NCBI GenBank assembly: GCA_002269645.1
Contig: NIVC01000337.1
Location: 1-64,000, forward strand
Source of the DNA: Macrostomum lignano
Lineage: Eukaryota
Direction: 5' to 3'
Length of the DNA: 64,000 nt
The notes beneath the pieces were generated by a model. The model ran no database searches. It was not told where the DNA came from and was given only the letters and a program-made list of their open reading frames with translations. The position numbers were made by a program, and so were the translations under genes. Shown in pieces: positions 8,489-64,000 of this stretch; position 1 is the first letter of the stretch; each line of letters begins with the position of its first letter.

Positions 8489-10039
<1,551 letters not shown>

Positions 10040-17397: not shown

Positions 17398-20881
<3,484 letters not shown>

Positions 20882-29241: not shown

Positions 29242-31524
29242 TCTTATATACTAAAGTTGAGTTTGTTTGTTTGTTTGTTTGCTTGTAACAGAAAATCTTG
29301 CGAATGGAATGACCGATTTTCTCCGTTTTTGCACCATTAGATGGCAAATTGTCCAGAATCGGTACACGTATTTTTAATAAGCTATCCAAATTAAAGAGGC
29401 CTCTCAATTGTCAGAAAACAGGTTTTTGCCCATCTTGCTAATGTATTTTTTCGGCAGTGAGAGCTTGCAAACGGTTTTGGCCATAGATTATAATGCTAAT
29501 AGCTGTAGGCTGCTTGGTTTTTATGTAGCCCACTGCTTCCTTTCCTTCTTTCTTTTCTTTGGTTTTTGAACCCTCTAATAGTGCTTTATCTATTTAGCCC
29601 CACTGTATGATGGTGCGCCGTGGCGCAAGCCATTTGAAGAGAAGCCGTGACGCAAAGAAAAGACGACTGGCCGAGTCTGCTGGAGAGCGCGATGCCTGTC
29701 TGGAAGAGCAGCGGCGGCGAGACGCCGAGCGCCGCGCTGTTGAAGACGAGGCTGAGCGGTTTGCCCGTCTGGAGGAACAGCGGCAGAGACAGGCTGAATG
29801 TCGCGTTGCTAAAGACGAGGCTGAGCGGATTGCCCGTCTGGAGGAACAGCGGCAGAGACAGGCTGAGTGTCGCGTTGCTGAAGACGAGGCTGAGCGGATT
29901 GCCCGTCTGGAGGAACAGCGGCAGAGACAGGCTGAGTTTCGCGCTGCTGAGGACGAGGCTGAGCAGATTACCCGTCTGGAAGAGCAGTGGCAGAGACAGG
30001 CTGATTGTCGGCGCGGTGAATCTGTCACCAGGTTACCTTGTGTCGAATCTATTGTGCCCTTTAGTCAGTTGCAGGTCAATACCACCATTGGCGATGGCAA
30101 CTGCTTTTTTCATGCCGTGTGCGACCAGCTACGTGGCACACCGCATGAAACCGATGCCGCTACCCTTTGGCATGAGTTGGCCTGTCGTGCAGTTGAACTT
30201 TTGCCACAGTTGGTCGCGAATGGCATCATCGCGCCTGATTGCGCCGATGAGATTGCGAATTCCTCCTTTCAGGAAGGGGTTTATATTTCAGACGAAGTGG
30301 CAGCTCTGTTTAGTAGCTGCTTTGACATGGACCTGGTGATTTACCAGTCCAATGGTAATGTGCTGCAATATTTCAAGTGTGACAAGCAGCCTCCCAATGC
30401 CACTGTGCGTGTGCTCTTGAGTCACGAGCACTACGAGTCGCTCAGACTTCGACCGTCTCTGCAAGCTTCTTCAGGTGCAGAGTGTCCCAGGCCAATGGCA
30501 AGCGGCTCAAAGGCAGTGCCAGTTGACATCCACAGCTCATGTGCCGACATTGGAGCATCGGGTGATCATCGGTGAGTCTTCTTCATTTGTCTTTTTGATT
30601 TGAACTGCTGTCCTCACAACATGTCTTATTCCACTGTACTCACAGACGTGCCGAGCCATTGCTGCCAGAGGCCCCGGCTCACCAGTGTGGACCAATGAAC
30701 AACGCCTGCAATGACTGTGGCGCATTGTTTTGGGCCAAAGAGACGCGCAACTTCTGCTGCGCCAAGGGCAAGGTGAAGCTGCCCACCCGTACGATGCCGC
30801 AGGTCTTGGCAGATCTTTACACGGGGCAGCACCGACTCAGTGCAGAGTTCCTGGCCCACATCAGGAGCTACAATGCGGTGCTGCACCTCACATCTCTGGG
30901 TGTGAAGCTCAGAATGGTGCCTGGCTATAGTCCCAGCTTCATCATCAGCGGCCAGCTGCATCACAATATGGGGCCGCTGCTTGCCGACCCCTCAGCCGAG
31001 CCGCATGGCTGGCAGGTGTATTTTACTGACCGCGAATTGGAGAGCCGCCTGAGCCTCAGTCAGAGAGTGAAGCCGGAGCTGCTAAAGCTGCTGCAAACTC
31101 TGCTGCATCAATCCAACGGCTACGTGCAAAGCCTTCGAGCTGCTGTTCAGCGAATCAGTGGCGACCCTGAGCTGGGAGATGCGCGAATTGTGATTCACCC
31201 GGACTGAAGACCAGCAGGGGAACACATTCGGTGAGTTTGTGGTGTCAAAATAAACTATGATGTATATATTGTATATATACATGATACAATATATAAAAAT
31301 ATAAAAATATAAAAATATGATTTTTCCTCAGGCGCTACAATCTTCCTATGGCCAATGAGGTTGGCATTCTTATCGTTGGTGGCACAGAGGACGCAACGAC
31401 AAATTATTGAGATATTGAATTATAGATACGGTGAATAAGAGAGATTATTATGAATATTAGTTAATCAATTGCGATAAATAACTGTACTAAATACTCTCCC
31501 CGAAGGGGGGTCAACTATTGCTAG
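29242..31524 (+). mobile_element. Internally deleted Helitron
   Basis: 5' A|TCTTATATACTAAAG followed by (TTTG)n; 3' hairpin CCCCGAAGGGG (31497-31507) then CTAG|T at 31521-31525; RepHel N-terminal coding sequence inside. Confidence 0.88.
29607..31412 (+). pseudogene. Helitron protein remnant: charged repeats, OTU protease and RepHel N-terminus
   Basis: Exons 29607-30571, 30646-31230 and 31332-about 31412 splice in frame. OTU motifs GDGNCFFHAV and HEHYESL; RepHel CNDCGALFWAKE...CCAKGKVKLP, IRSYN, RRYNLPMANEVG. Premature TGA at 31205; no Rep catalytic or helicase domain. Confidence 0.82.
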
Positions 31525-37400: not shown

Positions 37401-40400
37401 AGGCGGAAGGTCGGGCAGGTCGAGGATGCTGCCGGCCGCGGGAGCGGCGCTGGACGCAGTGGACGACGTCGAAGGCCCGTAGCTGAGTGGGTCGAACGGG
37501 TCGAAGGCCATGTCGCCGATCAGCAGGCCGCCGCCACCGCTGGAGGAGCTTGTCGGCGAGACTGCCGATGCTGCAGGTGCAGAGCCAGCGGCAGCCGACG
37601 AAGAAAAACCGCTGCTGGGCGCCTGCGGCGCCGACGCCTCTCTGAGCTGATCCTCGCCAATGAGCTCAGTGCATCGTTTGAGTACCTCGGCGGCCAGATC
37701 GTTGACGGCCAGCACCTCCTTCATGGACTCCTCGTCCGTGTTCTCCGTCTCTCCGGCCAGCCTGTAGAGCCTCGGCCGGGCCTCCCGCAGAGTCCGGTGC
37801 AGCTCGCGGATGATCTCCACATCGCTCTGAACAGCCTCGGTAGGCCTGTAGTGGTTGAGCATCTCGCTGAGCAGTTGGGCATTGTTGCGGACCGTCTCCA
37901 GCTCCCCTAGCCGCTTGGATAGCCGGTCCATGCGCTCGTTGTCCTGCTTCACTGCGGATTTGATCAGCCGGTTGGCGGCCATCAGGTCCTCGGGCCGCTT
38001 GGACCTGGCCGGGTGGAGCAACTTTGGCTTTTAATAATGCTGCGAATGACCCGTGCCTTCATGATGCTCAATAGGATGCTCCTTCTAAATCCCTGATCCC
38101 CTCAATAGGATGCTCATTGTAAATCCCTGATCCCCTCAATAGGATGCTCCTTCTACATCCCTGATCCCCTACCTCAATGGGAGGCTCCTTCTAAATCCCT
38201 GATCCCCTCCCCTCGACAGGATGCTCCTTCTAAATCCCTGATCCCCTACCTCAATGGGATGCTCCTTCTAAATCCCTGATCCCACTAATAGGATGCTCCT
38301 TCTAAATCCCTGATCCCCCTAGAGGGAGTCTTTTTCCCCTTTTCAATTTAGTTTAAAAATCTCACTAAGCTAAAAAAGCAACAGTTTCTCACTTGAGCAG
38401 CCTGCTAATCTCTTGAGCAGTTTTCTCGTCGTTAAATATAGCAGTGTCCTTCTCGCGCTTCAACGGTAGATAGGGATTTGAGCGCAGAGTCTGGTCGATG
38501 TACACCGGGTCCCTGGAGATGATGCCCTGCTTCTTCAGCATGTCGTAGGCCTCGCGAATCTTCGGCTCCGTGTAAAGGCCGCGGGACCAGCCGTAGAGGC
38601 ACTCGATGCAGCGCTTCTTCACCGCCTCGCTGGACGTGGCGCCCAGGTACTTCGGGGACAGGATCTTGATGATCTGGGAGGGGCGGTTGAGAGACGGGCG
38701 GGTCAGATAGTGGCACTCAGTGTAGGGAAAATGGCAGTCAGTGTAGGGGAGATAGTGGCACTCAGTGCAGTGGAGATAGTGGCACTCAGTGCAGGGGAGA
38801 TAGTGGCACTCAGTGTAGTGGAGATAGTGGCACTCGTTGTAGGGAAAATGGCGGACAGTGCAGGGGAGATAGTGGCACTCAGTGTAGTGGAGATAGTGGC
38901 ACTCGGTGTAGGGAAAATGGCGGACAGTGCAGGGGAGATAGTGGCACTCAGTGTAGGGAAAATGGCACTCAGTGCAGGGGAGATAGTGGCACTCAGTGCA
39001 GTGGAGATAGTGGCACTCAGTGCAGTGGAGATAGTGGCACTCAGTGTAACAAGTAACAGTAAGCTGGCATACCTCATTAAGAAAGCGGAATTTCCCCAGC
39101 TCCTGGTGAAACACGGGGCCGCAGTTGCGCACGCAAGCCTCGGTGACAGCCAGAGCGTAGAGAGCCTCATTCTCTTGCGGGCTGTGGATCTTGTGAGCCA
39201 ATAAGCGCAGAGCAATCTGCGGGCCTTCCAGCTCTTTGCTGACTTGCTGACTAAATTTGTTCACAGCGTCCCAGTTGATTTCTCGATTAGTTGGGTCAGT
39301 GGCTCGGTCTGTGAAGGTTATTTAAATTAAATGGTATTTATATATAGTATGAAAAATGAAAGTATTTGCATTTGATAGATTTCAGACATTTTTTATTCAA
39401 GATTTGTTTCAGGTATTCAAGCAAAGAAGTACAATCGAAAAAGATAGCAAAATATAAGTCACACTTAGGGAATCCCTTATTATCCTAACAGTGTTTTGTA
39501 TACTATGATCTTATTAATTTTTGGTACAATGGTATTAGACAATGCATATTAGCATTCCTTTTCAATAAAGTTTGTTTTATTTATTATTTATCCTGTACTT
39601 TAATTCAAATATGCTTTCCAAGAAAATTTTAATCATTCTCAAAGACATGCAATGTCTATCAATTTTTTTCTATCAAAGGTCATGCAGTGGCTAGAGTTTT
39701 AAGGCACCTCTTTGCCACAGAAATCTAAATGTACATTCACATGTACAGTAGTAGTATCAATTGATAGTACTTCTATTCTGATGTACATTTTCTGCAGTGC
39801 ACTTAACTGACAATGCACATCTAATACTTAAGTTCAAATCATATATTATGCTGTTAAAGGGGATAGGGGTTGGTCTAATAGATGGCTTATATCTAAAGCC
39901 TTGGTTGTGATAAAAATTAGACTTAACAGGATTTGTTGTTAAATTTGCCTAGATTGTTGCCAGATTAGCTTTTGCCAAATTTGTCCATATTAAATTTCTA
40001 TTGTTGAATTTGTTTATTGCAAAATTTGCATGCATTTCATGTTCTGGATCTGAGAATTGTTGAATAAGAAAAACAATTTGTTGATATTTTTATCTCTAAA
40101 ATTTTTTAATACAATAGTTTTAGTTACACTGGTTTGAAATCAAGCCTATTATTCTTTCTGTAAAAAATATATATACATCATATAATAGTTTATTAGAGTG
40201 ATGGAACCTATAGCATTTAACCAATATTAATAGAAATGTTAACCTATAGCATTTAACCAATATTAATAGAAATGTTAACCTATAGCATTTAACCAATATT
40301 AATAGAAATGTTAACCTATAGCATTTAACCAATATTAATAGAAATGTTAACCTATAGCATTTAACCAATATTAATAGAAATGTTAACCTATAGCATTTAA

Positions 40401-43400
40401 CCAATATTAATAGAAATGTTAACCTATAGCATTTAACCAATATTAATAGAAATGTTAACCTATAGCGGGTCGTTCTCAAATTCTGGGAGGAGCGAAAATT
40501 TTAACAATTTTCGGAACATTTACTATTGTTACTGCCGTATTGAAAATAATAGGACACTTTCATCTGTGAATAAAGATAATTTTTGGGTTGAAATTTATGT
40601 TGCAAAAGTGTTTTAAGTTGTCTTGCGGTATTAGGCGATATTAGGTGATGAAAAAATTCAAATTCAATCACTTCACCGATGTCCTAATTTTTGACACTAT
40701 GATGTCTGTAGCTAAAAAAAGTTGTTGTTGAGTTGAAAACTTGCTATATTACATTTAAAATGAAAGCTTATATAAATTTAATTTAAGATTTTTTTTAAAG
40801 CTTAATAAACTGCACTATAAATGATTTTATAGACGCTTAACTGTACGCCTAGCATTTCCGGTGGGATAGCCTCTTTGCGTCTCACAAAATGTATTTTTTC
40901 AGCTGACGTCTAGAATGTGCGCTTAAAATGATACATTTTGATGCAGATAATTAGAAAAACATGTCTTATTATCTTTTTGTAAAAAAATTGTTATGAAATA
41001 GAGCACTATTGTTGATAAAAATAATTAAAAGCAACCATGCATCGCAATAAACTCCTACTTTGAAGCACAAAATAAATATCCTGTAACCACACTAGCATTC
41101 TCCATGGAGCACCTTTTGAGCTGAAATTTTACACAGATATCCAGTAAAGTAAACTGAGCAAATGATTTTTTTTGTTTTTGAAAATACTTCAATTTGGCTA
41201 TGTATCAGTTAGTTCATTGGACATATTTATTATATTTTTATTAGAATCCTTGTAACCAAGCTACAGAGAAACATGTGCAAAACTGGACCTTGAAATTTGA
41301 CCTGAATGATCAGCAAATGTGTATCTCGAAATGATTTTTTTTGTTTTCATCAAGTCATTCTATGCTAATTTTTTCTGAAGGGAAAGATACCATGTATTTA
41401 GAGTCAATAGGGGAAGCATTTAGACTTATTCAATAGTCATTAAAATTGCAACTATATTATTATAATATAGTAATAATATTATACATGTATTATATAATAA
41501 TATTAACTTCTAAGATGCCCTTATAAATTTAAGTAAAGACAACAGGCCTTAATTAATTAATCAGCATTTTGAAGAAACTGACCTTATACAGATGGGCCCC
41601 AAGCTAAGAAATGAATGTAGAGCTTATTTCGTGTAAGGTATAAAAATCAATTTATTATAATATTAAATACTCCTAATAAATTGGTTAAATTAGTTATTTA
41701 CCTTGAATTAATTTAATTTAATAATTAAATATATAAATTTGTTTCACTTCTTACTGCATTTAAATAGAGTACCTCTCTACTATACTATAGAAGTATAGTA
41801 AAAGTATATGGTAAAAAAGTATAGTAAAAAATTTTCTTTGGTTTAATCCCAGCTTGCCTCAGTTTTTTAGTCTTAATACGAGCTAGATAGTAAGTGTTGA
41901 TTAATTTGCTCCATCACCTTTTGCCACGGAAACAGCACATGTCGGACATGCAACACTCTTCCTGATCCCTGGATTCAAGATGACTGCTTCTGCTTCTTCA
42001 ATGCTTGAAAACTGAGCTCATGGAGCTTTAGGTTATGCTGTCAGAGTGCTGCTGCCGGTGCTGTGTGTGTATGTGTGTGTCTTCTGTGGGTAGGTTCCCT
42101 GTCCCTCAGTTTAGCCACTGTTGTGGGCTAACTGGAGGAATTGCCGTTGTCGGTGCTGCAGGTGGCACTGCATGGTAGTATTGACGCTGTCAGTGACGCT
42201 GGCAAAGGCTTGGACGAAGCTAGGTGCCGTCATTGTCAGGAGGACATGCGTGTGCTGCTTAGACCAGTGCGCACATTCGACTGGACTCGTATCTGGTGCA
42301 GTCTGGTGTATTCACTGAGATTGTGTGGATCTGCCTCCTCGCATCACCTCAACCAGGCTCAATTTCTTTTGTAGAATTTTCGTGCGCTGCTTAACTGCAT
42401 CTTGTGCCTGCTGAGTGATGCCAAGAATTGTGCCACACAATAATTTGGCCCATAAACTACTCGTATATTATACATATGTATGCACAGCACACACACATGC
42501 AGTTCATTCACATTAAACGTACTAGTTAATGGAATTCTCATCTCATGAGCTCTAGTCTATGGACAAACCTGAAATTACTAGAATATCTAGACAGATCTAA
42601 ACTTCTTTGAGCAGCGCGCTGCGCTGCGAGCAAATACATGTAGATTCCTTAGCGCAACTAATTAATAGTGTAGTACAGTCTACAGCCTGAAGTAGCCTGT
42701 GTAAGATGCGGAGGGATGATTTTTGCATAGGAAGCCACTACGGTAAGGTTGATGGAACTATGGGGAGGTGAGAGATTCAAAGCGAGGGACGGAAGCCATG
42801 CATAGTTCGATCATAAGTTTGATTATTGCATGAGTCTGGGGATGCATTAACAAGAGGCAGACGAGAGCATAGAAATAAAGCGGGCTAAATATATTAATAC
42901 ACAAAATTACATGTACTAGCTAGTAATTTCAGAATGGTCAGCGACTCCTCCGATTTGTATCCGCGACCGCGTGCCCACAAATCCCCCGGCAGACCCTGTC
43001 GCAGTTGGTGGTTGTGCACAGAATACAATGTTAATTTTCGAGCTTCTCTGCAAAAAATGCGTGATGCACTCAAGATGCGTGCTATAGTCTACTTCTTTGA
43101 TTGATGGCTGGGTTTTGCCTTTTCGCTTGTGATCATCAAAAGCTTGGGCGTCATTGCTACTGGTGTTTCAGTGTGCGCATTATGTCTGGTTATCATATTA
43201 TGTGCATGTGCAGTGTCTTTTACCTACATTTTTGTTTGTCTCTGTTTCCTGCATGCTCTTTCGCATTTTTACACCTCGCACATCCTCATTTTTCTCAATT
43301 AACAAGTGAAATCTTTTCTTAAAGACTAATTGCTATTTTAGTTAAGCTAGTAGGTTTTTGGTAATTAAATAATTCAATTTTGTCTATTTTCCAAAAAGTT

Positions 43401-46400
43401 TCAAAAAATGAATTAATTAAAATAAATTTGAATTATTTTAAGTTAATTGGAGTAAAATGTCTAATAAGTAACTATGATTTTTTATTTTAAGTACATGTAG
43501 CTTTGGTATAAGTATTAATGTAATGAGTACTTAAAGTAAAATCAAGCAAGTTATAGTTTTCAGAAATTATGCTACAAATAATCAAATATATACTAGTATC
43601 TGAATTCCTTTATTAAGGAACATGCAGTCGATATTAAATCCACAATGTGCTTTTTGGTGTTCAAGGATAGTTCCCTGACTTTTTCTATTATTAGTTAGAT
43701 TTTATTATATTTAATGTAAAAATGAACAATTCTATTCAAGGTAAAAATGAACATTCTTTATTTGTCGAATCATCTTGCCTTTGAAAAGATACATAGTGAA
43801 AACTTGATTTTTAATTCAACCTTTCAAGACTTATTTAGACTTCTCAATTCAGTGATTAGTTAAACTGATCGAAGTTCTTTCGACTGCATGCTATAATAAT
43901 TTCGCACTTTTTCGCACACGATAATTTTAAATGTCAGGGATTTAGAGCAGAGTAACAAAATGCTGTGCTCAAAAACATTTCCTTTGTCAATTTCTTGTTC
44001 TTTTATTTTTGCAAAAGAAATTTAACTGCATATTTAAAATAAAAATGAAAGAAAATTTTATTTTCTCTTTAATATTTTTGTCGTTTATTTTCCGCAACAA
44101 AGAATAACAAATAGCCTTGATTTCTTCTCAATTTCAAGTTTTCTTGTGGTTTTAGTAGCAGCTTCTTACAGAAATTGTCAAAAGAATTTTTTTGTACGAT
44201 TATTGGTCGATGTATAAACTTTTTTTGCAATAACAAAAAGTTGTGACCTAGCTTTGAGAACGACCCTAGCATTTAACCAATATTAATAGAAATGTTAACC
44301 TATAGCATTTAACCAATATTAATAGAAATGTTAACCTATAGCATTTAACCAATATTAATAGAAATGTTAACCTATAGCATTTAACCAATATTAATAGAAA
44401 TGTTAACCTATAGCATTTAACCAATATTAATAGAAATGTTCACCTATAGCATTTAACCAATATTAATAGAAATGTTAAGCAGCTCCCCACCCTACTCCCT
44501 ATTTTATCCTACTCACTCCATTCTCAACCCCAATTTCCTAGCAGATAGTTTTTAAATAAACTTTTTGTCTGTTTAGTAGACAAACAAATAGAAAAAATGA
44601 ATTAGAAACCTATAAACCTGCCACTATCAGGGTGTGCAGTGTACACTAGAGTTTTGGACAAAAGATTAGGTATAGGTATATGCAAAGTACACCAAAAAAT
44701 GTCAAAGGGGTACTGTTCTATCTTTATGAATGCTCTCATAAAATGCTACAAAAGTTATAACAAGGCAAATTTTGTCCTTGTTCTCTACAAATTATTCTAA
44801 TATTGGTAGCTGCCACCAAGACTATTCTATTATTAAATTATTTTTCCTACATTAAGTCTGAGAATGTTTCTTAGAATTAATCTGAGTATATATCTGAGTA
44901 CTTTATCTTAGCATAAGTCTGAGTATTTGGTTTGTGAATTATTATTAGAATACTATTTAGCCCTTACAAGTATCATTCTTGTGTTATTCTAGTAGAGTTT
45001 ACTGTCATTCTAGTTGCCTTCACTAGTAATTTGGCCTGAGTGGTATACTGGTCTACTGTTATATGTACTTTCTGTATTCCAATCCTGGGTGTTACCAAGA
45101 TCAGAGGGTCATAGCCTCTGTAGTTTTCTATGTACTGCTAGGATCTACTTTGTCTCTTTCTACTACTTCTATTTCTCAGTAGTATGTACTGTATATGCTC
45201 TCTACCATTTCACTTCTCTTCTGCAAATGAATAACTTGGAAAACAACTTCATTTATATTTGCTTAGAATACTCCTTTCAACTTCTTAACTGTATTATATT
45301 GCTTGAACTGCGGGAGGTGAGTTGATCTTCAACTACCAAAACTCACTTCTATTAATACTATATTTTTGTATCATTTTAAACAAATAATTAAATTGTCAAA
45401 ATATTGTGCTAGGCCTATGCTCACTCTGTCTTCCTTATTGTTAGCCTTTGCCTAGTCACTTATCTTATGAGCTGCTACCAAAGTTGTCCTAGGGGTTACT
45501 TCTGTCTCTAATAATAATTTCACACTGTCACCAAAAGCTGTCACAGGGCTAATTTACTAATCTCTTAAGTGTTCTTCTTAGGTTGGTAGCAACCACCAAG
45601 ATTATTTGATTAATAAATTATGAGTTTATCAATATTAGAATAATCTGAGAAATGTTTCTTAGAATAGGTCTAAGTATAAGTCTATAAGTATCAGTCTAAG
45701 TATAAGTCTAAGAATAAGTCTAGGTATATGTCTAAGGATTAGTCTAAGTATCTACTTCTATTGGTAGCATTCTTAATATATGTATTGGTAGCATTCTTAG
45801 TATATGTATTGGTAGCATTCTTAGTATATGTATTGGTAGCATTCTTAGTATATGTATTGGTAGCATTCTTAGTATATGTATTGGTAGCATTTTTAGTATA
45901 TGTATTGGTAGCATTTTTAGTATATGTATTGGTAGCATTCTTAGTATATGTATTGGTAGCATTCTTAGTATATGTATTGGTAGCATTCTTAGTATATGTA
46001 TTGGTAGCGTTCTTAGTATATGTATTGGTAGCATTCTTAGTATATGTATTGGTAGCATTCTTAGTATATGTATTGGTAGCATTTTTAGTATATGTATTGG
46101 TAGCATTTTTAGTATATGCTGAGTGGTCTACTATTGGCCTGGAATGTATTTCTCAGAATGATCTTCCTTGTAATTCTTTTGCAGTTATTAAGTATCTGAT
46201 CGTCTAGTCCAGTCCTTTAGGCGTTCCCGAGATTAGAGGGTCACAGCCTTCTTAATACTGCATATGTATTCCTGAGATCTACTTTGTTTCACTTGAATCT
46301 CCTTGGTATTCTGCGTATCAATAGTATCTGTGGTATGATTAACTTCCACTTCACTCTTCAAATCGAAAAATTTACTAAGTCTTGAAAAGATTTCTAAGTA

Positions 46401-53021: not shown

Positions 53022-53594
<573 letters not shown>

Positions 53595-54006
53595 AAACGA
53601 ACTTTTATTTAGTTACTTTTGGTGGGACAGAAGCGGATATATTTAAATAGAAAGCACCAACAGAATAGAATAAGTGATGCTGATTTCACTCCAATAAATA
53701 TGCTCATAAAAGTTTCAGTTATTACAAAACAGAATCGGAATGCAGTTTAATGTGAGATCCGAGCGTAAATAAAAGAAATCGTGTTTAAATAAAATTTCAT
53801 AAAAGTTTCTGCCAGAAACATGAAGACACAATTGTGAGAGTTGCGATTCACAGTATGATTTTTTGCCGTTTAATAAAATGTAACAACGCGAGATGAGGAC
53901 AATAGTCAGTCACTGATAATTTTGTTTTTCGCAACCGATATAAAGAATGGGATTATTAAAAAGCATCTTCAGACATTAACACTGATAATTGAACTGTGAC
54001 AAAAAT

Positions 54007-54695: not shown

Positions 54696-55519
54696 CTGGA
54701 GTGGCTGGAGCAGTGTGCATTATTTTACTTGGGCAGCAAGAAGCAAAAGTGTTCAATCAGCAAATGAAATCGGTGAATTTTTTTCATTTTTAATTTTTAA
54801 TTTTTAATTTTTTCAGCCAACTGCATGGGCCAAATTCATGGAATTTGCGGAACTTGCAACAATTAAGTTCCTAGCAACGTAGCGACAGCCACCTCAGCAT
54901 GAGCGCCATCACTTCATACAGGCAACAATGGCTTTTCATCTATCTTCTAGAACTGACTGGTACAGGGACTGCTGTTATAATTCAAAATTCTGTAATTGCC
55001 TTTCAATCTCGACAGACAGAAAATCGATTTCAAAATTATCGATAAATAATTGATTTCGATTGCCAAATAATTGAGAAAAACTACGTACTTTGGACTGAGG
55101 TTGGTGTTTAGAAGGGTCACCGTCCCTAGTAAAGGGTTCTTATTCACAGTGAGTCATGATAAAGGCCATGATAAAGGTTGGTGCGTTACCCTCGAAGGGG
55201 CGTGGTACCCACCCTACCGCTCCACCTGACCGGGCTGGACTCTCAAGGATGGCCCGACCCAGGAAAGGAACAGCTAGCGACCCAGCTACAGTGTGAATGT
55301 AGTAAAGTTGAAAAAAGTGTTTAAAAAACACTGTATGAAAAATGTAATGTTAAAACTGCTCACAAAGTATTACTCAAAGTAACACTTCAGCTTTATTGCC
55401 TAGTCAATACAATAATGAAATTAACAAAAAGGCTCAAATTTCATTTCCTACTGTGAGAAAAAGCACAGTTCAAGGAGCAGACCACACCGAATAGCTGGAT
55501 AGCAATGAGTTCAATAACT

Positions 55520-55810
55520 TCAACCCTTTTCCTGCGGTCTCCGCCCTTCTTCTTGCTGTTTCCGCCATTGTTCCTGCGTCGTCCGCCATTGTTCGTGGGT
55601 TGTCCGCCATTGTTCCTGCGTTTTCCGCCATTGTTCCTGCGTTGTCCGCCATTGTTCCAGTGGTCTCCGCCCTTGTTCCAGTGGTCTCCGCCCTTGTTCC
55701 AGCGTTGTCCATCCGTTACTGGAGCCATCAGGCAGACTGGAAGCCGCGATGGCGCACAGAAGCACCGCAGTGGCCGCAAGAAGAAGACGCCTGGATGAGT
55801 TTGTCGCCAT
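55520..55810 (-). pseudogene. Paralogue of the GGDRWNK secreted repeat gene, frameshifted by an 11-nt deletion
   Basis: Same signal peptide (MATNSSRRLLLAATAVLLCAIAASSLP); lacks CTCCACGAAGG after the signal region. About 9 diverged 21-bp units read GGDHWNK/GGQRRNN in the original frame. Confidence 0.7.
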
Positions 55811-55885: not shown

Positions 55886-55905
55886 CGGTTATTTATGCGG
55901 AATTT
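55886..55905 (-). promoter_or_regulatory. Conserved TATA-like promoter element of the left paralogue
   Basis: Exact reverse complement of AAATTCCGCATAAATAACCG (62882-62901), about 80 bp upstream of the ATG. Confidence 0.5.
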
Positions 55906-55979
55906 AAAGATACAGTAGGTTGATTACGCAACCGCCGCGGAAATTCTCCGGCGATTGAAATATAAAAGTTTTCAAATGT

Positions 55980-56744
55980 GAGGGAGGTCAGTGTGAGGGA
56001 GGTCAGTGTGAGGGAGGTCAGAGTGAGGGAGGTCAGTGTGATGGAGGTCAGTGGGAGGGAGGTCAGAGGGAGGGAGGTCAGAGTGAGGGAGGTCAGTGTG
56101 ATGGAGGTCAGTGTGAGGGAGGTCAGAGTGAGGGAGGTCTGTGTGATGGAGGTCAGTGGGAGGGAGGTCAGAGGGAGGGAGGTCAGAGTGAGGGAGGTCA
56201 GTGGAAGGGAGGTCAGTGTGATGGAGGTCAGTGTGAGGGAGGTCAGTGTGAGGAAGGTCAGAGTGAGGGAGGTCAGTGTGATGGAGGTCAGTGGGAGGGA
56301 GGTCAGTGTGAGGGAGGTCAGTGTGAGGGAGGTCAGAGTGAGGGAGGTCAGTGTGAGGGAGGTCAGAGTGAGGGAGGTCAGTGTGATGGAGGTCAGTGTG
56401 AGGAAGGTCAGAGTGTGGGAGGTCAGTGTGATGGAGGTCAGTGGGAGGGAGGTCAGAGGGAGGGAGGTCAGAGTGAGGGAGGTCAGTGGGAGGGAGGTCA
56501 GTGTGATGGAGGTCAGTGTGAGGAAGGTCAGAGTGAGGGAGGTCAGTGTGATGGAGGTCAGTGGGAGGGAGGTCAGAGGGAGGGAGGTCAGAGTGAGGGA
56601 GGTCAGTGGGAGGGAGTTCAGAGTGAGGAAGGTCAGTGTGAGGGAGGTCAGTGTGATGGAGGTCAGTGGGAGGGAGGTCAGAGGGAGGGAGGTCAGTGTG
56701 ATGGAGGTCAGTGGGAGGGAGGTCAGTGGGAGGGAGGTCAGTGT
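55980..56744. repeat. 15-bp minisatellite
   Basis: Unit GAGGGAGGTCAG(A/T)G(T/G); inverted counterpart at 62152-62520. Confidence 0.95.
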
Positions 56745-58150: not shown

Positions 58151-61100
58151 CTAACTGTGCACCCAGCCAAAGCTCTGTCCAACCCGGATCTTCTGTCCAG
58201 CCGTGGCAGCGAATTGAAACTGTTCGGGCGCCTCAAACACCAGCACGACGGTGCTGCCCAGGTTGAACTGGCCGAACGGCTCGCCTTTGCCGAAGCGCGG
58301 ATTCGGCTGGAGGCGTCGGTCAGCAAAGCCGGCCGGCCCGGCCTGTTTGGCGCCGCGGTTGGTTGCCAGCTCCTGTGGGAGCAGAGAAGAGAGTTCTCAG
58401 CTACATGGGACTAAGACCTGACTGAGTAGCGGATCGCGGTCTCCTAGATCGTCCCATCCGGGATGCTTGTCGAGACGATTTGCAGGGTTAATTTAACCAC
58501 CCAAAGCACCAAGTGTGCACTAAGTAACCCGTACAGCAGTCCGACGTCTAGCCGACGTATGACGTCTTTATCAGTGGATGTATAGATAATTGCTGTACGG
58601 GTAACGACCACTAGATATTACCTCCTTAATCAGAACATTCAAAGTAAAATTATTTGAGTTCACAACTTCGAAATTTACTGAAACTTTGGACCTGTTTGTA
58701 CGCGTTAAATGATAATTTTTGACAGACTTTTTCTACAAAATTTTGTCCTCAAACAAGACTTAATATCTAACAATTGATTAGCAAATGCAAATTCATTTTT
58801 TACTGTGGTATCGAAAGTCACTAGGCTACTGAAGCCTGACTGTGTAAATGGATTTTATACTGTTCTAAGGTGCTGAGAAGGTGCTGAAGTGCAGTGAGTT
58901 GTCAAGGAAGTGGTACTCAGATTCCCTGAAACAGCTAACCTACCTGATGGCATTTAGTATGTCACGTTGAAGACATCCCTCCCCGCGACTCTTACCGGAT
59001 CGCAGGCGACGCTGATGGACCCGACGCCAGTGGCTCCGACAGCCGTCATGCTGAAGAAGCCGTGGCGCCACTCGCCGACAAAAACCGCCCGCTCGTTGAC
59101 GCAGAACAGGCCGGCCACGCACGCGGCCACGGGCGGCGCCACGGACAGCAGGCGGCCGGGGAAGTGGCGCCTGGCCAGCACCAGCCAGTCGGCCGGTGAG
59201 TGAAACCGGTGATAGTCACCCGGTGCTAGGTAGATCGTGCAGTGGAACAGCTGCGTACCGGGCAGGCGGCGCAGGCCTTCCAAGTAGGGACCGTCGCTAC
59301 TCGACGCTTTATGGTTGCTAGGCAGAGTCTGGTTTTTGTCGAATTCGCCAATCGGCTGGGGACCAAGGAAACCCTGCGGTGGTTGGCAGGTGGTTGGCAG
59401 GTGGTTTTGTGGCATTTGCACTGGCGATTGGAGCTAGAAATGGTATTTCATAGCTAGTCATGTCCATTCCTACGCCACGCACTCAGACAGGGTGCACAGC
59501 GAACCCGACTTTCTAATTGTCAGACATACATACTGTCGGTGCCTTGGGGGTTGATCCTACGTACAGGTCCCACACTACCCCAATAGGCCTCTTGAAGTTG
59601 TCATTGTTAACTGAATTTCTGGCATCAGAGACCAATCCGTGATCCAAGTTTTAGCATCCGGAAAATCGAGGACGAACCACCTGTTGCACAGTATTGCTCA
59701 AACAAACATTAGTGCCACGTTCGACTACTAATTAGTAGAAATTAGTTTGATAAAGTCCCGGTTTGGCGAGCCAAAGGGGTGAAACAGTGCCGGTTAACAG
59801 CCCTCCCGACCTTCAAAGATAAGGGACTTGTAGGCGGGTAGAGAAGGATTAACGAGCACCAGAACTCTTAAAGTGTACATTGAGAACCAGGTGTTTAAAC
59901 TACAGAACAGAACGGCATTAACAGATATAACAGGCCTAATTCAGCTCACCTGTAAGCTGTAGGTGATGCCCTTCACCTGCTCCAGGTGACCGGCATAAAC
60001 CCGGCCCAGGCTGAGCACCCGGCCGTCGGCGGGGGACACCAGGTCACTCGTCGGGCACACCGGTCGAAGGCCCGGCCGGAGGCTGCGAGAGAAAAACTCG
60101 GCCAAGCTGTTGAAATCCGCCAGGCCCTGACAGTCGGCCTCGGTCAGGTCGCAGCTGCAGAGACGGCTGTACAGCCGGTAGACTGGGGCGCGGGCCAGCC
60201 GGGGCAGCGGGCGGCTGTGACAGCGGCCCCAGGCACGGGAGATGAAGTTCAGAGGCAGCGGCAGGCGGCAGTAGGCCTGAGGGTGGGCAGAGGGGCGGAC
60301 CAGCTGGCTGAGGGAGTGGCTACCCAACTGGGTGAGGGAGTGGCTACCCAACTGAGTGAGGGAGTGGCTACCCAACTGAGTGAGGGAGTGGCTACCCAAC
60401 TGAGTGAGGGAGTGGCTACCCAACTGAGTGAGGGAGTGGCTACCCAACTGAGTGAGGGAGTGGCTACCCAACTGAGTGAGGGAGTGGCTACCCAACTGAG
60501 TGAGGGAGTGGCTACCCAACTGAGTGAGGGAGTGGCTACCCAACTGAGTGAGGGAGTGGCTACCCAACTGAGTGAGGGAGTGGCTACCCAACTGAGTGAG
60601 GGAGTGGCTACCCAACTGGGTAGATGAGAGGCAGCTGACTGATCCGTTGATCCATAAAGTGCAAGGAAAGGTTGACGCAAATGAGTGAACTACTTAAAGA
60701 TCAGTGGAAATTTCTCATACAAATTGTTTGCACTAAAAAGCTGCTGATATCTCTTTGAGTTTGCAGCCCCCCATGCAGTCCTGGCTGCCCCACCCAGTCT
60801 TATCTCCTCACGATAACAGCCCGCAATTAATCGGGCAAGTTTAAAACATTTTTCAGCATTTCAAAGGTCGGTGGAAAATTACAGAGTTTCCGGAACCGGT
60901 CACGCAACCAGTTGGTGAACCAGTTGGCCGGTTGTTCAAACTGGATTGGCTCAGACAAAGCCTGCAGCTCTGGCCCCCCAGAGCAAACCAGAATTCGACA
61001 AGTCAGCTGAGGTAGATTCGAACTCCAATAGCGACTTAGCAAGGCTGAAAACACAATCTTTTTAAGGCAGGTAAAAATTTCAACATTTTTCGCTAGCAGT

Positions 61101-61788
61101 GAGAGGGGTGAGCGAAGCACCGCCTCGAAGCGAACTTTATGAGCCGAACATGCCCTCGGATTTCGGCGCTGAGACAGGCGGCAGACCGCTCGTTTCACTC
61201 GTACTGCCCCCCCCCCACTGACCCTCTCTCACTGACCCCCCTCACTGACCCCCCTCTCACTGACCCCTCTCCCCGACTCCGCCCTCGCTGACTCTCCTAG
61301 CTCGTATTTCTGACTCCAGTTCACTGACTCATCATTTATTCAATGGCATCCGTGAGATGAGCTTGGGGGAAATTGCTGAGATCTCAAAGGCGAATGAGAT
61401 TCGCTTATTGGCCGCCCCGAAGGGGGGTACCAGACTGCTGGTCTGTTTTGCTAAATCGGTAATCAATGTACGAGCTATTACATGTAGGTAACAATGCAAC
61501 TTAATAATGAGCCACGCTCCATTGTCACCTTGATTGTTAAGAATTTCAACAAGTATTTCAACAAAGATTTCCTGATATATCGATTCTGACACCGGGCTGT
61601 TGACTCACCCTGATGAGGCAGGTCCGCAGAGCCATCCAGCTGCCAACAACGGCAGCCAGGAGGTGCAGCAGGGCGAGCAGCGGCAGCAGCTGCCAGCCCG
61701 AGACCGCCGCACCGTCAGAGCAGATGGTGGCAACCACGATGGCGCTGGCAATGAGGGTTCGCTTGCGGCACTGCGACAGGCGCATCAT
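58151..61788 (-). CDS. PISD: Phosphatidylserine decarboxylase proenzyme
   Basis: Exons 61788-61609 (start tentative), 60276-59950 (ISRAWG...[12 protein letters not shown]...VSPADG...VKGITYSLQ), 59373-58996 (GFLGP...[14 protein letters not shown]...NERAV...VGATGVGSI) and 58372-58151 ([16 protein letters not shown], the LGST autocleavage site). Confidence 0.92.
60310..60620. repeat. 24-bp minisatellite just upstream of the PISD exon 2 acceptor
   Basis: Unit GAGGGAGTGGCTACCCAACTGAGT, 13 copies. Confidence 0.96.
61415..61442 (+). mobile_element. Candidate Helitron 3' terminus
   Basis: CCCCCGAAGGGGGG-N-TGCTGG|T mirrors the 3' end at 31497-31525; 5' end not found. Confidence 0.4.
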
Positions 61789-62151
61789 CCTTAGTTGTAT
61801 TAAAGTACAATGGGAACTTTCCGAATAAAAACTTTGCCGACGAAGCTTCTGAGCGACTTCAGGTCTCAGTCTCACCAGCTTGAGGTTGTGCCACTCTCAC
61901 TAATACTAGTTTTGTATGCGATTTTTGTAAACAATTCTTATCTGTTCTGCAGCTGAGCTCGAGGCTGGGGTTGCCCGAACGCCAAGAGGCTTCATATTGG
62001 CTGATCTTCGAATTTGGGTAGTGCTTCAACAGAACTGCGCAGGGACCCAGTTAGGCGCTTAATAGGAGAGTGGTTTAGCAAGTTCTGCCAAACTCAAGTT
62101 ACTGTTGCAGACCTGAGCTGGTCTTGCTGACCCCGTGAAACATTTGCAATG

Positions 62152-62520
62152 ACCTCCCTCACACTGACCTCCCTCACTCTGACCTCCCTCACTCTGACCT
62201 CCCTCACTCTGACCTCCCTCACTCTGACCTCCCTCACTCTGACCTCCCTCACTCTGACCTCCCTCACTCTGACCTCTCTCACTCTGACCTCCCTCACTCT
62301 GACCTCCCTCACTCTGACCTCCCTCACTCTGACCTCCCTCACTCTGACCTCCATCATCCTGACCTCCCTCACTCTGTACCTCCCTCACTCTGACCTCCAT
62401 CATCCTGACCTCCCTCACTCTGTACCTCCCTCACTCTGATCTCCATCATCCTGACCTCCCTCACTCTGTACCTCCCTCACTCTGATCTCCATCATCCTGA
62501 CCTCCCTCACTCTGGACCTC
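62152..62520. repeat. 15-bp minisatellite (inverted copy of 55980-56744)
   Basis: Unit ACTCTGACCTCCCTC. Confidence 0.95.
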
Positions 62521-62881
62521 CCTTAAATTTTAAACTTGAAAAAATGTAAGCTTCAATTGCTGGAAAAATCGTGTGTGATTATTAATGAAGTAAAAGAAGC
62601 TTTACACAAACCCTTTTTGTTTCCGTAGCAGATCAGATGTTTTTACTTAAAACTGGCATATCGCGGTACTAATCAAGTGCGGGCCAGACCGAAACAAATC
62701 AATAAGGTTGGCTATTAGCAGTTTGCACCTGGCAAAATGCAGCCACACCTACTGGTAAATAAGACGAAGTGGTAAATTCCAGTTAATTTGAGATTTTCTC
62801 AGCACATCTGAATGTTCACCTGGCACCAAGGCTCTGTTGCAGGTGCTCGGGGTTGCATAATCAACCTATCGTGTTCTCTTC

Positions 62882-62901
62882 AAATTCCGCATAAATAACC
62901 G
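62882..62901 (+). promoter_or_regulatory. Conserved TATA-like promoter element
   Basis: AAATTCCGCATAAATAACCG is identical in both paralogues although the flanks have diverged; about 90 bp upstream of the ATG. Confidence 0.5.
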
Positions 62902-62992
62902 GTATGCTTCATGGCTCAGAACTCTCAGAACGCCCAGAACTCTCAGATAGCGTTTTGCTAACTGCCAAAACAATTTGCTTCAAGCAAACAGA

Positions 62993-63661
62993 ATGGCGAC
63001 AAACTCATCCAGGCGTCTTCTTCTTGCGGCCACTGCGGCGCTTCTGTGCGCCATCGCGGCTTCCAGTCTGCCTGATGGCTCCAGTAACGGCTCCACGAAG
63101 GACGGACAACGCTGGAACAAGGGCGGAGACCGCTGGAAGAAGGGCGGTGACGGCTGGAACAAGGGCGGAGACCGCTGGAACAAGGGCGGAGACCGCTGGA
63201 ACAAGGGCGGAGATCGCTGGAACAAGGGCGGAGATCGCTGGAACAAGGGCGGAGACCGCTGGAACAAGGGCGGAGACCGCTGGAACAAGGGCGGAGACCG
63301 CTGGAACAAGGGCGGAGACCGTTGGAACAAGGGCGGAAACCGTTGGAACAAGGGCGGAGACCGCTGGAACAAGGGCGGAGACCGCTGGAACAAGGGCGGA
63401 GACCGTTGGAACAAGGGCGGAGACCGCTGGAACAAGGGCGGAGACCGCTGGAGCAAGGGCGGAGACCGCTGGAACAAGAGCGGAGACCGCTGGAACAAGA
63501 GCGGAGACCGCTGGAACAAGGGCGGAGACCGCTGGAACAAGGGCGGAGACCGCTGGAACAAGGGCGGAGACCGCTGGAACAAGGGCGGTGACGGCTGGAA
63601 GAAGGGCGGAGACCGCTGGAACAAGGGCGGTGACGGCCGGAAGAAGGGGGGAGATTATTGA
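62993..63661 (+). CDS. Putative secreted protein with about 26 GGDRWNK heptad repeats (222 aa, single exon)
   Basis: ATG 62993; hydrophobic signal peptide LLLAATAALLCAIAAS; 21-bp repeats; TGA 63659-63661; AATAAA near 63767 and 63813. Several unit variants are synonymous in this frame (GGA/GGT, GAC/GAT, CGC/CGT). Confidence 0.72.
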   Translation: MATNSSRRLLLAATAALLCAIAASSLPDGSSNGSTKDGQRWNKGGDRWKKGGDGWNKGGDRWNKGGDRWNKGGDRWNKGGDRWNKGGDRWNKGGDRWNKGGDRWNKGGDRWNKGGNRWNKGGDRWNKGGDRWNKGGDRWNKGGDRWNKGGDRWSKGGDRWNKSGDRWNKSGDRWNKGGDRWNKGGDRWNKGGDRWNKGGDGWKKGGDRWNKGGDGRKKGGDY

Positions 63662-63856
63662 ACCCTTTGCTATTCAATTATTTGGTGCTCTGCTCCTTGA
63701 ACTCCTTCTCCCACAATGGGAAATGAAATCTGAGCCTTTGTGTTTTCTCTTTTATTGACTTGACCAATAAATCTGCAGTGTTACTTTGGTGGTACTTTGT
63801 GAGTAGTTTTATAATAAAATTGTTCACCCTGTGTTTTCGCAAACATTCTTTCAACC

Positions 63857-64000
<144 letters not shown>

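What the first reader, a model, noticed from the sequence alone, without database searches (positions are those of the whole stretch)
62993..63661. Unassigned secreted protein built from about 26 GGDRWNK heptads
Seen: signal peptide, short linker, then a Gly/Trp/Arg/Lys/Asp heptad array. The GGT GAC variant is silent in this frame but creates TGA in the LEQGRRP frame, and other variants are also silent, which supports this frame as coding. I do not recognise the family. Inference: regularly spaced Trp/Arg/Lys with alternating charges suits cation-pi coacervating adhesive, mucus, eggshell or seminal proteins, a cationic Trp-rich antimicrobial, or a precursor cut at monobasic sites into many identical peptides.
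Basis: partly seen in the sequence, partly recalled or inferred. Interest (0 to 1): 0.75.

Follow-up and report, generated by a model that had tools for sequence, protein, structure and literature searches.

The report
Orphan secreted Gly/Trp heptad-repeat gene pair
The window holds what looks like a real, compact animal gene for a secreted, very basic, tryptophan-rich protein made of 26 GGDRWNK heptads. It has no relatives in any database searched, and a nearby inverted copy reads the same repeat in a different frame. Its function is only inferred, probably a sticky or condensing secreted material.

Summary
ORF 62993-63661 (+) encodes 222 aa: a signal-peptide-like N-terminus, a 12-aa linker, 26 heptads (17 exact GGDRWNK) and a GGDY tail. 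It rests on a 21-nt array of 26.5 copies at 93% identity.

It looks like a real intronless gene:
- A TATA-like box lies 102 nt upstream.
- The ATG has a strong Kozak context.
- AATAAA lies 105 nt after the stop.
- Codon choice fits the host only in this frame.

An inverted paralogue lies 7.2 kb away (55520-55810, -). Its first 88 coding nt are 87/88 identical to the target, against 78-86% in the flanks.

The AETAGTR frame has as many silent variants as the GGDRWNK frame.

In the paralogue, two indels (-11 and -1) bracket the array. The same signal peptide is therefore fused to the LEQGRRP/QEQWRTT frame and the original stop frame is regained. This is either a pseudogene or a re-framed protein.

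No homologue was found in Pfam, 5.8 billion proteins, 1.84 billion representatives, PDB, metagenome contigs or the literature. Hits were unrelated heptad minisatellite translations.

The source is a fast-evolving metazoan. The species could not be identified, and flatworm origin is unverified.

Function is inferred only: a disordered polycation (net +27, 12.5% Trp) that acts by multivalent binding. Interest is moderate.

The parts
62147..62534 (.). Upstream 15-nt minisatellite (TGACCTCCCTCACTC, about 25 copies). It is part of the duplicated unit.
   Evidence: TRF. blastn finds its counterpart upstream of the paralogue at 55970-56744.
62535..62850 (+). Promoter-distal segment, most of which is present only in the target copy. 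About 275 nt are absent from the paralogue.
   Evidence: Alignment A1. blastn finds no match elsewhere in the window.
62890..62899 (+). TATA-like box CATAAATAAC, 102 nt upstream of the ATG. It is identical in the paralogue.
   Evidence: Sequence and alignment A1. That it is a promoter is inferred.
62993..63661 (+). Coding sequence of 222 aa plus TGA. No intron is needed. The Kozak context is acagaATGG.
   Evidence: It is the only ATG-ORF with a signal-like N-terminus over the array.
62993..63064 (+). Predicted signal peptide (aa 1-24, MATNSSRRLLLAATAALLCAIAAS). Cleavage is likely after residue 22-25.
   Evidence: Hydropathy and the -3/-1 rule. Coding nt 1-88, which contain this segment, are 87/88 identical to the paralogue.
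63065..63100 (+). Linker SLPDGSSNGSTK, with one N-X-S sequon (NGS).
63101..63646 (+). 26 x 21-nt units encoding the heptad array. The consensus is GGC GGA GAC CGC TGG AAC AAG = GGDRWNK.
63647..63661 (+). C-terminal GGDY plus the TGA stop.
63766..63771 (+). AATAAA polyadenylation signal 105 nt after the stop. It is conserved in the paralogue.
   Evidence: Sequence and alignment A2. Function is inferred.
55520..55810 (-). Paralogue ORF of 96 aa. It has the same signal peptide, then (LEQGRRP)2 (Q/L/H EQWR T/K T/Q)5 QEEGRRP QEKG*. The array is read one frame away from the target's frame.
   Evidence: An 11-nt deletion in the linker and a 1-nt deletion at the array end bring the frame back to the ancestral stop.
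55524..55712 (-). Paralogue's degenerate 21-nt array of about 9 units, 82% matches. In the target's frame it reads DGQRWNK GGDHWNK GGDHWNN GGQRRNN GGKRRNN GGQPTNN GGRRRNN GGNSKKK GGDRRKR.
55888..55897 (-). Paralogue's TATA-like box CATAAATAAC.
55392..55397 (-). Paralogue's AATAAA.
55977..56744 (.). Paralogue's upstream 15-nt minisatellite (51 copies).

Best explanation
This is a small, intronless, lineage-restricted animal gene. It is one of an inverted pair that flanks a phosphatidylserine decarboxylase gene.

Its product enters the secretory pathway through a cleavable signal peptide. It is released as a flexible chain of about 200 aa and 22.7 kDa. That chain consists of 26 Gly-Gly-Asp-Arg-Trp-Asn-Lys heptads, with pI 10.6, net charge +27, 28% Gly, 12.5% Trp and well-mixed charges.

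The most likely way of working is as a multivalent 'sticker and spacer' polycation. The 25 evenly spaced Trp/Arg (plus Lys) stickers are separated by Gly-Gly spacers. They would make many weak cation-pi, pi-pi and electrostatic contacts with each other and with polyanionic partners such as acidic or sulfated glycans, surfaces or microbial envelopes. This would condense them into a cohesive secreted material such as glue, mucus, a coat or a seminal/egg secretion. The number of heptads would set the valency.

The array evolves by unequal exchange of 21-nt units. The paralogue shows that it can be shifted into another frame behind the same signal peptide.

Shown: the ORF, the repeat, the gene-like signals, the paralogue, the conservation of the 5' coding end, the codon fit, and the lack of homologues.

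Inferred: transcription, secretion, disorder, and the whole biophysical mechanism.

My split: about 0.7 that it is a real gene for a secreted repeat protein, and about 0.3-0.35 that the multivalent-binder/material mechanism is right. The confidence of 0.4 is my single figure for the statement as a whole.
For: - The repeat and ORF are real and far beyond chance.
- The signal-like N-terminus is in frame after the first ATG, which has a strong Kozak context. The background rate of such N-termini is 2/58 ORFs.
- A TATA-like box at -102 and AATAAA at +105 are both kept in the paralogue.
- The first 88 coding nt are 87/88 identical between the copies. Identity is 86.5% in the promoter and 78.5% in the 3' flank. 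The binomial P is about 1e-5 at 15% divergence.
- The heptad uses the host's preferred synonymous codon at 5 of its 6 degenerate codons. GC3 is 0.86, against 0.78 in 756 reference codons. The other two frames give 0.57.
- The third frame has three TGAs.
- No ATG-ORF covers the array on the minus strand.
- Composition: FCR 0.41, NCPR +0.135, kappa 0.06, GRAVY -2.3.
- Published precedents exist for basic, low-diversity, short-repeat secreted adhesives. One mussel protein (Pvfp-1) is thought to use modified Trp instead of DOPA. Tubeworm Pc-1 to Pc-5 are another example (PMC4275877).
Against: - There is no transcript, peptide or orthologue evidence of any kind. The source species is absent from the protein collections.
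- The window is crowded with minisatellites (64 TRF rows). Several lie open in frame in or beside the GGA-like and phosphatidylserine decarboxylase genes, probably within introns. An open frame by itself therefore means little.
- Within-array variants show no excess of silent changes in this frame.
- The near-identity of the 5' coding end includes all synonymous sites. About 4 differences would be expected and 0 are seen. Local gene conversion therefore explains it as well as selection does.
- The paralogue does not keep the GGDRWNK frame or its Trp.
- Well-mixed charges (kappa 0.06) do not favour self-coacervation by electrostatics alone.
- The AlphaFold single-sequence result is contradictory: one model is a long helix at pLDDT 78.7 and four models are at about 40. 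It says nothing reliable about disorder.
Confidence: 0.4

Rival explanations
1. There is no selected protein function. A 21-nt minisatellite expanded inside a recently duplicated segment. The ORF is then a young or decaying gene or a chance ORF. Under this reading the paralogue is a pseudogene and the identical 5' end is a gene-conversion tract.
For: - The minisatellite density of the window is high.
- Arrays in the GGA-like and phosphatidylserine decarboxylase genes are also open in frame.
- The paralogue array is open in all three frames, and two of three frames are open in the target.
- Silent variants are not enriched in the proposed frame.
- Zero synonymous differences in the conserved 88 nt points to conversion.
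- The paralogue is frameshifted and short, has lost Trp in the original frame, and uses rare GAA/CAA codons in its new frame.
- There is no homologue anywhere.
Against: - The coincidence of a TATA-like box, a Kozak ATG, a textbook signal peptide, codon fit in exactly that frame, a stop and AATAAA is hard to get by chance.
- The conserved block sits on the start of the coding sequence.
- The paralogue's two indels sum to a multiple of three and restore the ancestral stop frame. A pseudogene has no reason to do that, although the chance of it is about 1 in 3.
Confidence: 0.22
2. A host-defence polycation. The Trp/Arg/Lys-rich, Gly-rich chain, whole or cut into shorter pieces, binds and disrupts microbial envelopes, like Gly-rich repeat antimicrobial peptides of other invertebrates.
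For: - Net charge is +27, and Trp and Arg occur in every heptad.
- Armadillidin is a published cationic peptide with 47% Gly and a six-fold GGGF(H/N)(R/S) repeat, and it has membranolytic activity (PMC5031766).
- KK pairs sit near both ends of the array and could be processing sites.
Against: - The mature chain is about 200 aa, not 20-60.
- There is an Asp in every heptad, no hydrophobic face, and GRAVY is -2.3.
- There is no canonical furin or dibasic processing pattern through the array.
- There is no homology to any antimicrobial peptide family.
Confidence: 0.12
3. A multi-copy peptide precursor. Cleavage after the Lys of each heptad (Arg at P4) would release about 25 copies of GGDRWN(K) as signalling or pheromone peptides.
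For: There is a signal peptide followed by many identical short units. Each unit has R-x-x-K, which fits the loose monobasic rule of a basic residue at P4 (the rule is from general knowledge, not tested here).
Against: - No Gly precedes the basic residue, as amidation would need.
- There are no acidic spacers and no KR/RR pairs.
- The units abut without flanks.
- The paralogue encodes a quite different peptide.
Confidence: 0.05
4. Both paralogues are functional, and selection acts on composition (one Trp, one Arg and acidic/polar residues per heptad) rather than on sequence. Under this reading the array can be read in either frame behind the same signal peptide.
For: - The indels (-11 and -1) bracket the array and are compensating.
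- The paralogue's derived T>A removes Trp from the old frame.
- Its derived G>T creates TGG in the new frame, in 5 of 9 units.
- Among the most similar paralogue units, 2 of 4 differences are silent in the new frame and 0 in the other two frames (read).
- The signal-peptide coding part is kept.
Against: - Each observation is n=1. A Trp-creating change has about a 10% chance by accident.
- The new frame uses the host's rare GAA and CAA codons.
- Gene conversion can explain the conserved 5' end.
- The paralogue product is nearly neutral (net +3) and poor in Gly (8%), so it is not really alike in composition.
Confidence: 0.1

Closest known systems
Short-repeat basic adhesive/cement proteins of marine invertebrates (mussel foot protein Pvfp-1 of Perna viridis; tubeworm cement Pc-1, Pc-2, Pc-4, Pc-5)
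   Same: All are secreted and basic. All have highly repetitive primary structure with few amino-acid types. Gly and aromatic residues are prominent. Pvfp-1 is thought to use modified Trp (7-hydroxy, C-mannosyl) where other mussel proteins use DOPA (PMC4275877).
   Different: No sequence homology was detected. The repeat here is a heptad with an Asp in every unit and no Tyr or Pro. The W-x-x-W/C spacing that one search's C-mannosylation review (PMC8433626) gives as the acceptor motif is absent, since Trp recurs every 7 residues. Gland expression, modification and adhesive role are untested.
Glycine-rich repeat antimicrobial peptides (armadillidin, shepherin type)
   Same: Both are cationic, Gly-rich and unstructured. 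Both are built from a short repeat that combines Gly-Gly, an aromatic residue and a basic residue (GGGF(H/N)(R/S) in armadillidin; PMC5031766).
   Different: Armadillidin is 53 aa and 47% Gly with no acidic residue in the repeat. This protein is about 200 aa and 28% Gly with an Asp in every heptad. There is no homology.
Bacterial protein P0001 (368 aa, Candidatus Sericytochromatia MAG)
   Same: It contains about 5-6 heptads GGDRWSK/GGDRGSN, 60% identical to the array over 57 aa, behind a hydrophobic N-terminal leader that ends in Cys (lipoprotein-like).
   Different: It is bacterial. The stretch is short and sits inside a larger protein with a different aromatic-rich C-terminal part. It has no Pfam domain and its neighbours are uninformative. 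This is best read as convergence of a low-complexity motif.
Other heptad (21-nt) minisatellite translations in public protein sets, e.g. GGRRWVR (P0126), GGYKKNK (P0190), GGDKPGK in a fungal hydrophobin-annotated protein of Acaromyces ingoldii (P0230)
   Same: Same period, Gly-Gly start, and charged or aromatic fill. P0230 also has a signal-like N-terminus.
   Different: The units, flanks and organisms are different. Most are singletons from unannotated contigs. They share periodicity and composition, not ancestry.
Ohno-type re-framing of internally repetitious coding sequence (concept from general knowledge)
   Same: A repeat poor in T stays open in several frames, so a frameshift yields a new long ORF. 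The paralogue shows this behind an unchanged signal peptide.
   Different: There is no evidence here that the re-framed product is made or useful.

Membership tests
Any Pfam-A family | Score above the curated gathering cut-off | tested here: not met
   0 families at E<=0.01 for the target and for the paralogue product.
Any protein family detectable by sequence in public genomes or metagenomes | A homologue that shares the non-repeat N-terminus, or the repeat unit with its flanks | tested here: not met
   - 5.8 billion proteins: one bacterial low-complexity hit.
- 1.84 billion representatives: 752 hits, and the 12 I read out of the 150 listed were all unrelated heptad repeats.
- Metagenome contigs: none.
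- PDB: only designed CTPR repeats at 27 bits.
Marine-invertebrate short-repeat adhesive/cement proteins (functional class) | N-terminal signal peptide | tested here: inconclusive
   It passes a hydropathy, charge and -3/-1 heuristic. SignalP was not available.
Marine-invertebrate short-repeat adhesive/cement proteins (functional class) | Highly repetitive sequence with limited amino-acid diversity and a basic pI | tested here: met
   Six residue types make up 93% of the mature chain, and pI is 10.6.
Marine-invertebrate short-repeat adhesive/cement proteins (functional class) | Expression in an adhesive gland, presence in the secreted glue, and modified aromatic residues | not testable with these tools
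   No transcript, proteome or tissue data exist for the unidentified source species.
Glycine-rich repeat antimicrobial peptides | Short mature peptide (tens of residues), Gly around 40-50%, cationic without acidic residues in the repeat | tested here: not met
   The mature chain is about 200 aa and 28% Gly, with Asp in 24 of 26 heptads.
Glycine-rich repeat antimicrobial peptides | Antimicrobial activity | not testable with these tools
   This needs a peptide assay.
Multi-copy neuropeptide/peptide-hormone precursors | Copies flanked by dibasic sites (or monobasic with spacers) | tested here: inconclusive
   A single Lys ends every heptad, with Arg at P4. Only four dibasic sites (KK x2, RKK, and RR in the leader) exist, and there are no spacers.
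Multi-copy neuropeptide/peptide-hormone precursors | Gly immediately before the basic site, for C-terminal amidation (a common though not universal feature) | tested here: not met
   The residue before Lys is Asn (or Ser or Lys) in every unit.
RTX-type calcium-binding beta-roll repeats | Nonapeptide period GGxGxDxUx | tested here: not met
   The period is 7 rather than 9, the motif does not fit, and there is no Pfam hit.
GW/WG Argonaute-binding repeats | Intracellular protein with Trp flanked by Gly or small residues | tested here: not met
   Trp is flanked by Arg and Asn. A signal peptide points to secretion.

The most novel reading that the evidence does not exclude
The two inverted paralogues may be a natural case of one tandem repeat translated in two different frames behind the same signal peptide. 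In that case both products would be used, and selection would act on heptad composition (one Trp plus Arg per unit) rather than on sequence. That would be a compensated frameshift that created a new secreted repeat protein (QEQWRTT type) from a GGDRWNK-type ancestor.
Probability: 0.1. Interest if true: 0.7.

Novelty: new variant of a known kind. Interest (0 to 1): 0.38.

Why it matters
If it is expressed, this is one of the most Trp-dense natural secreted proteins, with 25 Trp in 200 residues and strict 7-residue spacing. It would be a simple natural sticker-and-spacer polymer for studying cation-pi driven condensation or adhesion, and it has no known relatives.

The paralogue offers a testable example of how T-poor repeats tolerate frameshifts and may yield new secreted proteins.

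There is also a practical point. Trypsin would cut the protein into GGDR and WNK, so standard shotgun proteomics would never see it. Proteins of this type may be systematically missed.

If it is not expressed, it is a useful caution about how gene-like a minisatellite locus can look.

Tried and rejected
Searches that found nothing useful:
- Exact-product look-ups for the target, the paralogue ORF and a retrotransposon ORF found nothing on record.
- The word-indexed homology search gave only a bacterial low-complexity hit. Its genomic context was uninformative.
- The exhaustive HMMER search gave 752 hits. The ones I read were unrelated heptad translations.
- A back-translated pattern scan of metagenome contigs found nothing.
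- A degenerate signal-peptide DNA pattern scan of metagenome contigs also found nothing.
- PDB gave only spurious hits to designed CTPR repeats.
- Rfam found nothing in the window.
- The bacterial promoter/terminator scan is irrelevant to a eukaryotic locus.
- Literature string searches for the heptad and its permutations gave 0 relevant papers.

Species identification failed:
- The phosphatidylserine decarboxylase exon matched best at 56-72% identity.
- The DYRK1 exon matched best at 75%.
- The sample accession of a 72% Logan hit is not in the paper library.
- A remembered Macrostomum spliced-leader sequence is absent from the window, which proves nothing.

Structure: AlphaFold without an alignment gave one long helix (pLDDT 78.7) and four models at about 40. 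I rejected this as uninformative for a chain with Gly-Gly in every heptad, and ran no fold search on it.

Readings rejected:
- The AETAGTR-frame ORF (62904-63758). Its ATG lies at or upstream of the likely transcription start, it has no signal peptide, its start is not kept in the paralogue, and its codon fit is poor.
- Minus-strand ORFs. None starts with ATG over the array.
- An intron rescuing the paralogue's frame. There is no GT...AG candidate in the linker.
Full report
**What is there**

An ATG at 62993 opens a 222-codon frame that ends at TGA 63659-63661. The product has four parts:
- a leader, MATNSSRRLLLAATAALLCAIAAS
- a short Ser/Gly/Asn linker
- 26 heptads
- a tail, GGDY

TRF reports one array at 63098-63654 with period 21, 26.5 copies, 93% matches and score 953. 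The consensus 21-mer GGCGGAGACCGCTGGAACAAG, allowing up to 3 mismatches, occurs 28 times in the window and never in 100 shuffles. In register, 13 units equal the consensus and 17 heptads read exactly GGDRWNK. The variants cluster at the two ends of the array, as is usual for arrays homogenised by unequal exchange.

**Genomic setting**

The window is animal nuclear DNA. It carries:
- a Gypsy-type pol with RT, RNase H and integrase, and a non-LTR RT
- a DYRK1/minibrain kinase exon
- a GGA-like VHS+GAT gene
- a phosphatidylserine decarboxylase (PSD) gene

It is crowded with tandem repeats, with 64 TRF rows. Several arrays whose period is a multiple of three lie open in frame in or beside real genes, probably within introns. 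An open frame across a minisatellite is therefore weak evidence here.

The species could not be named. The PSD exon finds nothing above 72% identity and the DYRK1 exon nothing above 75%. The best named hits are vertebrates, annelids and insects. That indicates a fast-evolving metazoan absent from the protein collections. The flatworm assumption is unverified.

**Is it a gene?**

Several independent features say yes.

1. The first ATG has a strong context (acagaATGG). It is followed by a leader with a basic n-region, a 15-residue uncharged hydrophobic core and small residues at -3/-1. A crude heuristic finds such N-termini in only 2 of the other 58 ATG-ORFs of 80 aa or more in the window. One of those two is a microsatellite translation.

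2. A TATA-like CATAAATAAC lies 102 nt upstream and AATAAA lies 105 nt after the stop. The upstream ATGs at 62904 and 62911 fall just after the TATA-like box. They would lie before a start site about 30 nt downstream of it.

3. I took 756 codons from the DYRK1, PSD and GGA exons as a reference (GC3 0.78). The heptad uses the preferred synonymous codon at five of its six degenerate positions: GGC, GAC, CGC, AAC and AAG. Its GC3 is 0.86. The other two frames give 0.57 and include rare codons such as GAA and CAA.

4. There is a second copy.

**The paralogue**

An inverted copy lies 7.2 kb away on the minus strand, head to head with the target. The PSD gene lies between them.

The copy shares these parts, in order:
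- the upstream 15-nt minisatellite
- the TATA-like box
- the end of the 5' UTR
- the ATG and leader
- a degenerate 21-nt array of about nine units
- the stop region
- about 200 nt of 3' flank with the AATAAA

These are shown. No third copy exists in the window.

Identity is 86.5% in the promoter and 78.5% in the 3' flank, but 87/88 in the first 88 coding nt. The binomial P is about 1e-5 at 15% divergence. The single difference is Ala>Val. No synonymous site differs, where about four differences would be expected. Selection on the peptide alone does not explain the block, and a local gene-conversion tract is an equally good reading.

**Frames**

I counted variant types within the array:
- 3 of 9 are silent in the GGDRWNK frame (GGT, GAT, CGT).
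- 4 of 9 are silent in the AETAGTR frame.
- 2 of 9 are silent in the LEQGRRP frame.

The argument therefore does not discriminate. What does discriminate for the target is the in-frame ATG and leader, the three TGAs in the LEQGRRP frame, and the codon fit.

The paralogue behaves differently. An 11-nt deletion in the linker fuses the same leader to the LEQGRRP-type frame. The result is a 96-aa ORF: MATNSS...SSNGWTT(LEQGRRP)2 LEQWRTT QEQWRKT QEQWRTT HEQWRTT QEQWRKQ QEEGRRP QEKG*.

A 1-nt deletion at the end of the array returns the reading to the ancestral stop frame. Compare ...QEKG*SY*THCYP with ...GGDY*TLCYS. A new TGA three codons earlier ends the ORF. The two indels thus bracket the array and sum to -12.

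The paralogue's array was built by amplifying a variant like the first unit (GGACAACGC). That unit is shared by both copies as DGQRWNK.

Two derived changes are notable:
- T>A removes Trp from the old frame (TGG>AGG).
- G>T creates TGG in the new frame, in five units.

Among its most similar units, two of four differences are silent in the new frame and none in the others (read).

These points hint that the paralogue may be a maintained, re-framed gene, but each is a single event. About 3% of point changes create a Trp codon in that frame, so the Trp gain has about a 10% chance over the changes seen. The compensating indel has about a 1 in 3 chance. The new frame also uses the host's rare GAA and CAA codons, and its product is nearly neutral and Gly-poor. 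I rate 'pseudogene' as more likely than 'functional re-framing'.

**Relatives**

None were found.
- Pfam gives nothing.
- The word-indexed search of 5.8 billion proteins returns one hit. It is a bacterial MAG protein with five to six GGDRWSK/GGDRGSN heptads behind a lipoprotein-like leader, best read as convergence.
- The exhaustive HMMER pass over 1.84 billion representatives returns 752 hits. The 12 I read out of the 150 listed were translations of other 21-nt repeats: GGRRWVR, GGYKKNK, GDETVKA, and GGDKPGK in a fungal hydrophobin-annotated protein.
- Metagenome scans, PDB and literature string searches add nothing.

**What it probably does**

This part is inferred. After leader removal the chain is about 200 aa and 22.7 kDa. 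Its properties are pI 10.6, net +27, 28% Gly, 12.5% Trp, fraction of charged residues 0.41, well-mixed charges (kappa 0.06) and GRAVY -2.3.

Gly-Gly in every heptad and the lack of hydrophobic residues other than Trp argue for a flexible chain. The single-sequence AlphaFold run was contradictory and is not used.

Regularly spaced Trp and Arg separated by Gly-Gly is the pattern of a multivalent sticker-and-spacer polymer. I therefore favour a role as a secreted binder or condenser of polyanionic partners or surfaces.

The closest functional precedents are the basic, low-diversity, short-repeat adhesive and cement proteins of mussels and tubeworms. Pvfp-1 among them is thought to use modified Trp (PMC4275877).

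A defence role resembling Gly-rich repeat peptides such as armadillidin (PMC5031766) is a weaker rival. The chain is long and carries an Asp in every unit.

A multi-peptide precursor is the least likely reading. There is no amidation Gly, no spacers, and only four dibasic sites, one of them the RR in the leader.

**Verdict**

I put about 0.7 on a real gene for a secreted repeat protein. I put about 0.3-0.35 on the multivalent-binder mechanism and about 0.2 on no selected function.

It is a new variant of a known kind: lineage-restricted secreted low-complexity repeat proteins. Interest is moderate. It is raised somewhat by the extreme Trp density and by the re-framed paralogue. It is lowered by the complete lack of expression evidence and by how common orphan repeat ORFs are in such genomes.

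Noticed in passing
window 62147-62534 and 55977-56744: The same 15-nt minisatellite (TGACCTCCCTCACTC) sits upstream of both gene copies, with about 25 and 51 units. It was duplicated together with the gene. Whether it affects the promoters is unknown.
   Followed up: partly
window 62535-62850: The target's promoter region carries about 275-316 nt that the paralogue lacks. This segment has no other match in the window. It is either an insertion in one copy or a deletion in the other.
   Followed up: partly
window 58954-61875 (-): A phosphatidylserine decarboxylase gene lies between the two head-to-head paralogues. A 24-nt minisatellite (60309-60618, 12.9 copies, 99% identity) is open in frame directly upstream of a PSD exon (LTQLGSHS repeats). 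It is probably intronic.
   Followed up: partly
window 36828-39264 (-): A GGA-like gene (VHS, N-GAT, GAT). The ORF 38389-39264 that carries the VHS match also runs through a 24-nt minisatellite (38705-39048) without a stop. This shows that open frames over minisatellites are common here.
   Followed up: partly
window 19187-19957 (-): A DYRK1/minibrain kinase exon. The best identity to any protein in the 5.8-billion set is only 75%, which suggests a fast-evolving lineage. A 60-nt minisatellite (17995-19245, 21 copies) overlaps the 3' end of the exon ORF.
   Followed up: partly
window 8489-10039; 53026-53595; 63856-64000: Very long microsatellites: (CAGA) about 392 copies, (ATG) about 188 copies, and (CTTA) running off the window end just after the target gene's 3' flank.
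   Followed up: no
window 1560-5628 (+); 25445-27649 (+): A Gypsy-type retroelement (a gag-like ORF, then pol with RT, RNase H and integrase) and a separate 734-aa non-LTR-type reverse transcriptase ORF. Both have long intact frames.
   Followed up: partly
window 29607-31207 (+): Two ORFs with no Pfam match. The first contains a 69-nt coding repeat (29685-30010, ERIARLEEQRQRQAECR-type, 4.7 copies). The second is Cys-rich at its start. They may belong to a mobile element.
   Followed up: no
window 40205-40466 and 44267-44478: Two arrays of the same 36-nt unit (100% and 98% internal identity) lie 3.8 kb apart in AT-rich DNA. They may be the two ends of one element.
   Followed up: no
L002 3405-4511 (protein P0001): A bacterial (Candidatus Sericytochromatia MAG) protein with a hydrophobic N-terminal leader ending in Cys (lipoprotein-like) carries GGDRWSK/GGDRGSN heptads, 60% identical to the animal array. 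It has no Pfam domain. This looks like convergent use of nearly the same heptad in a secreted bacterial protein.
   Followed up: partly
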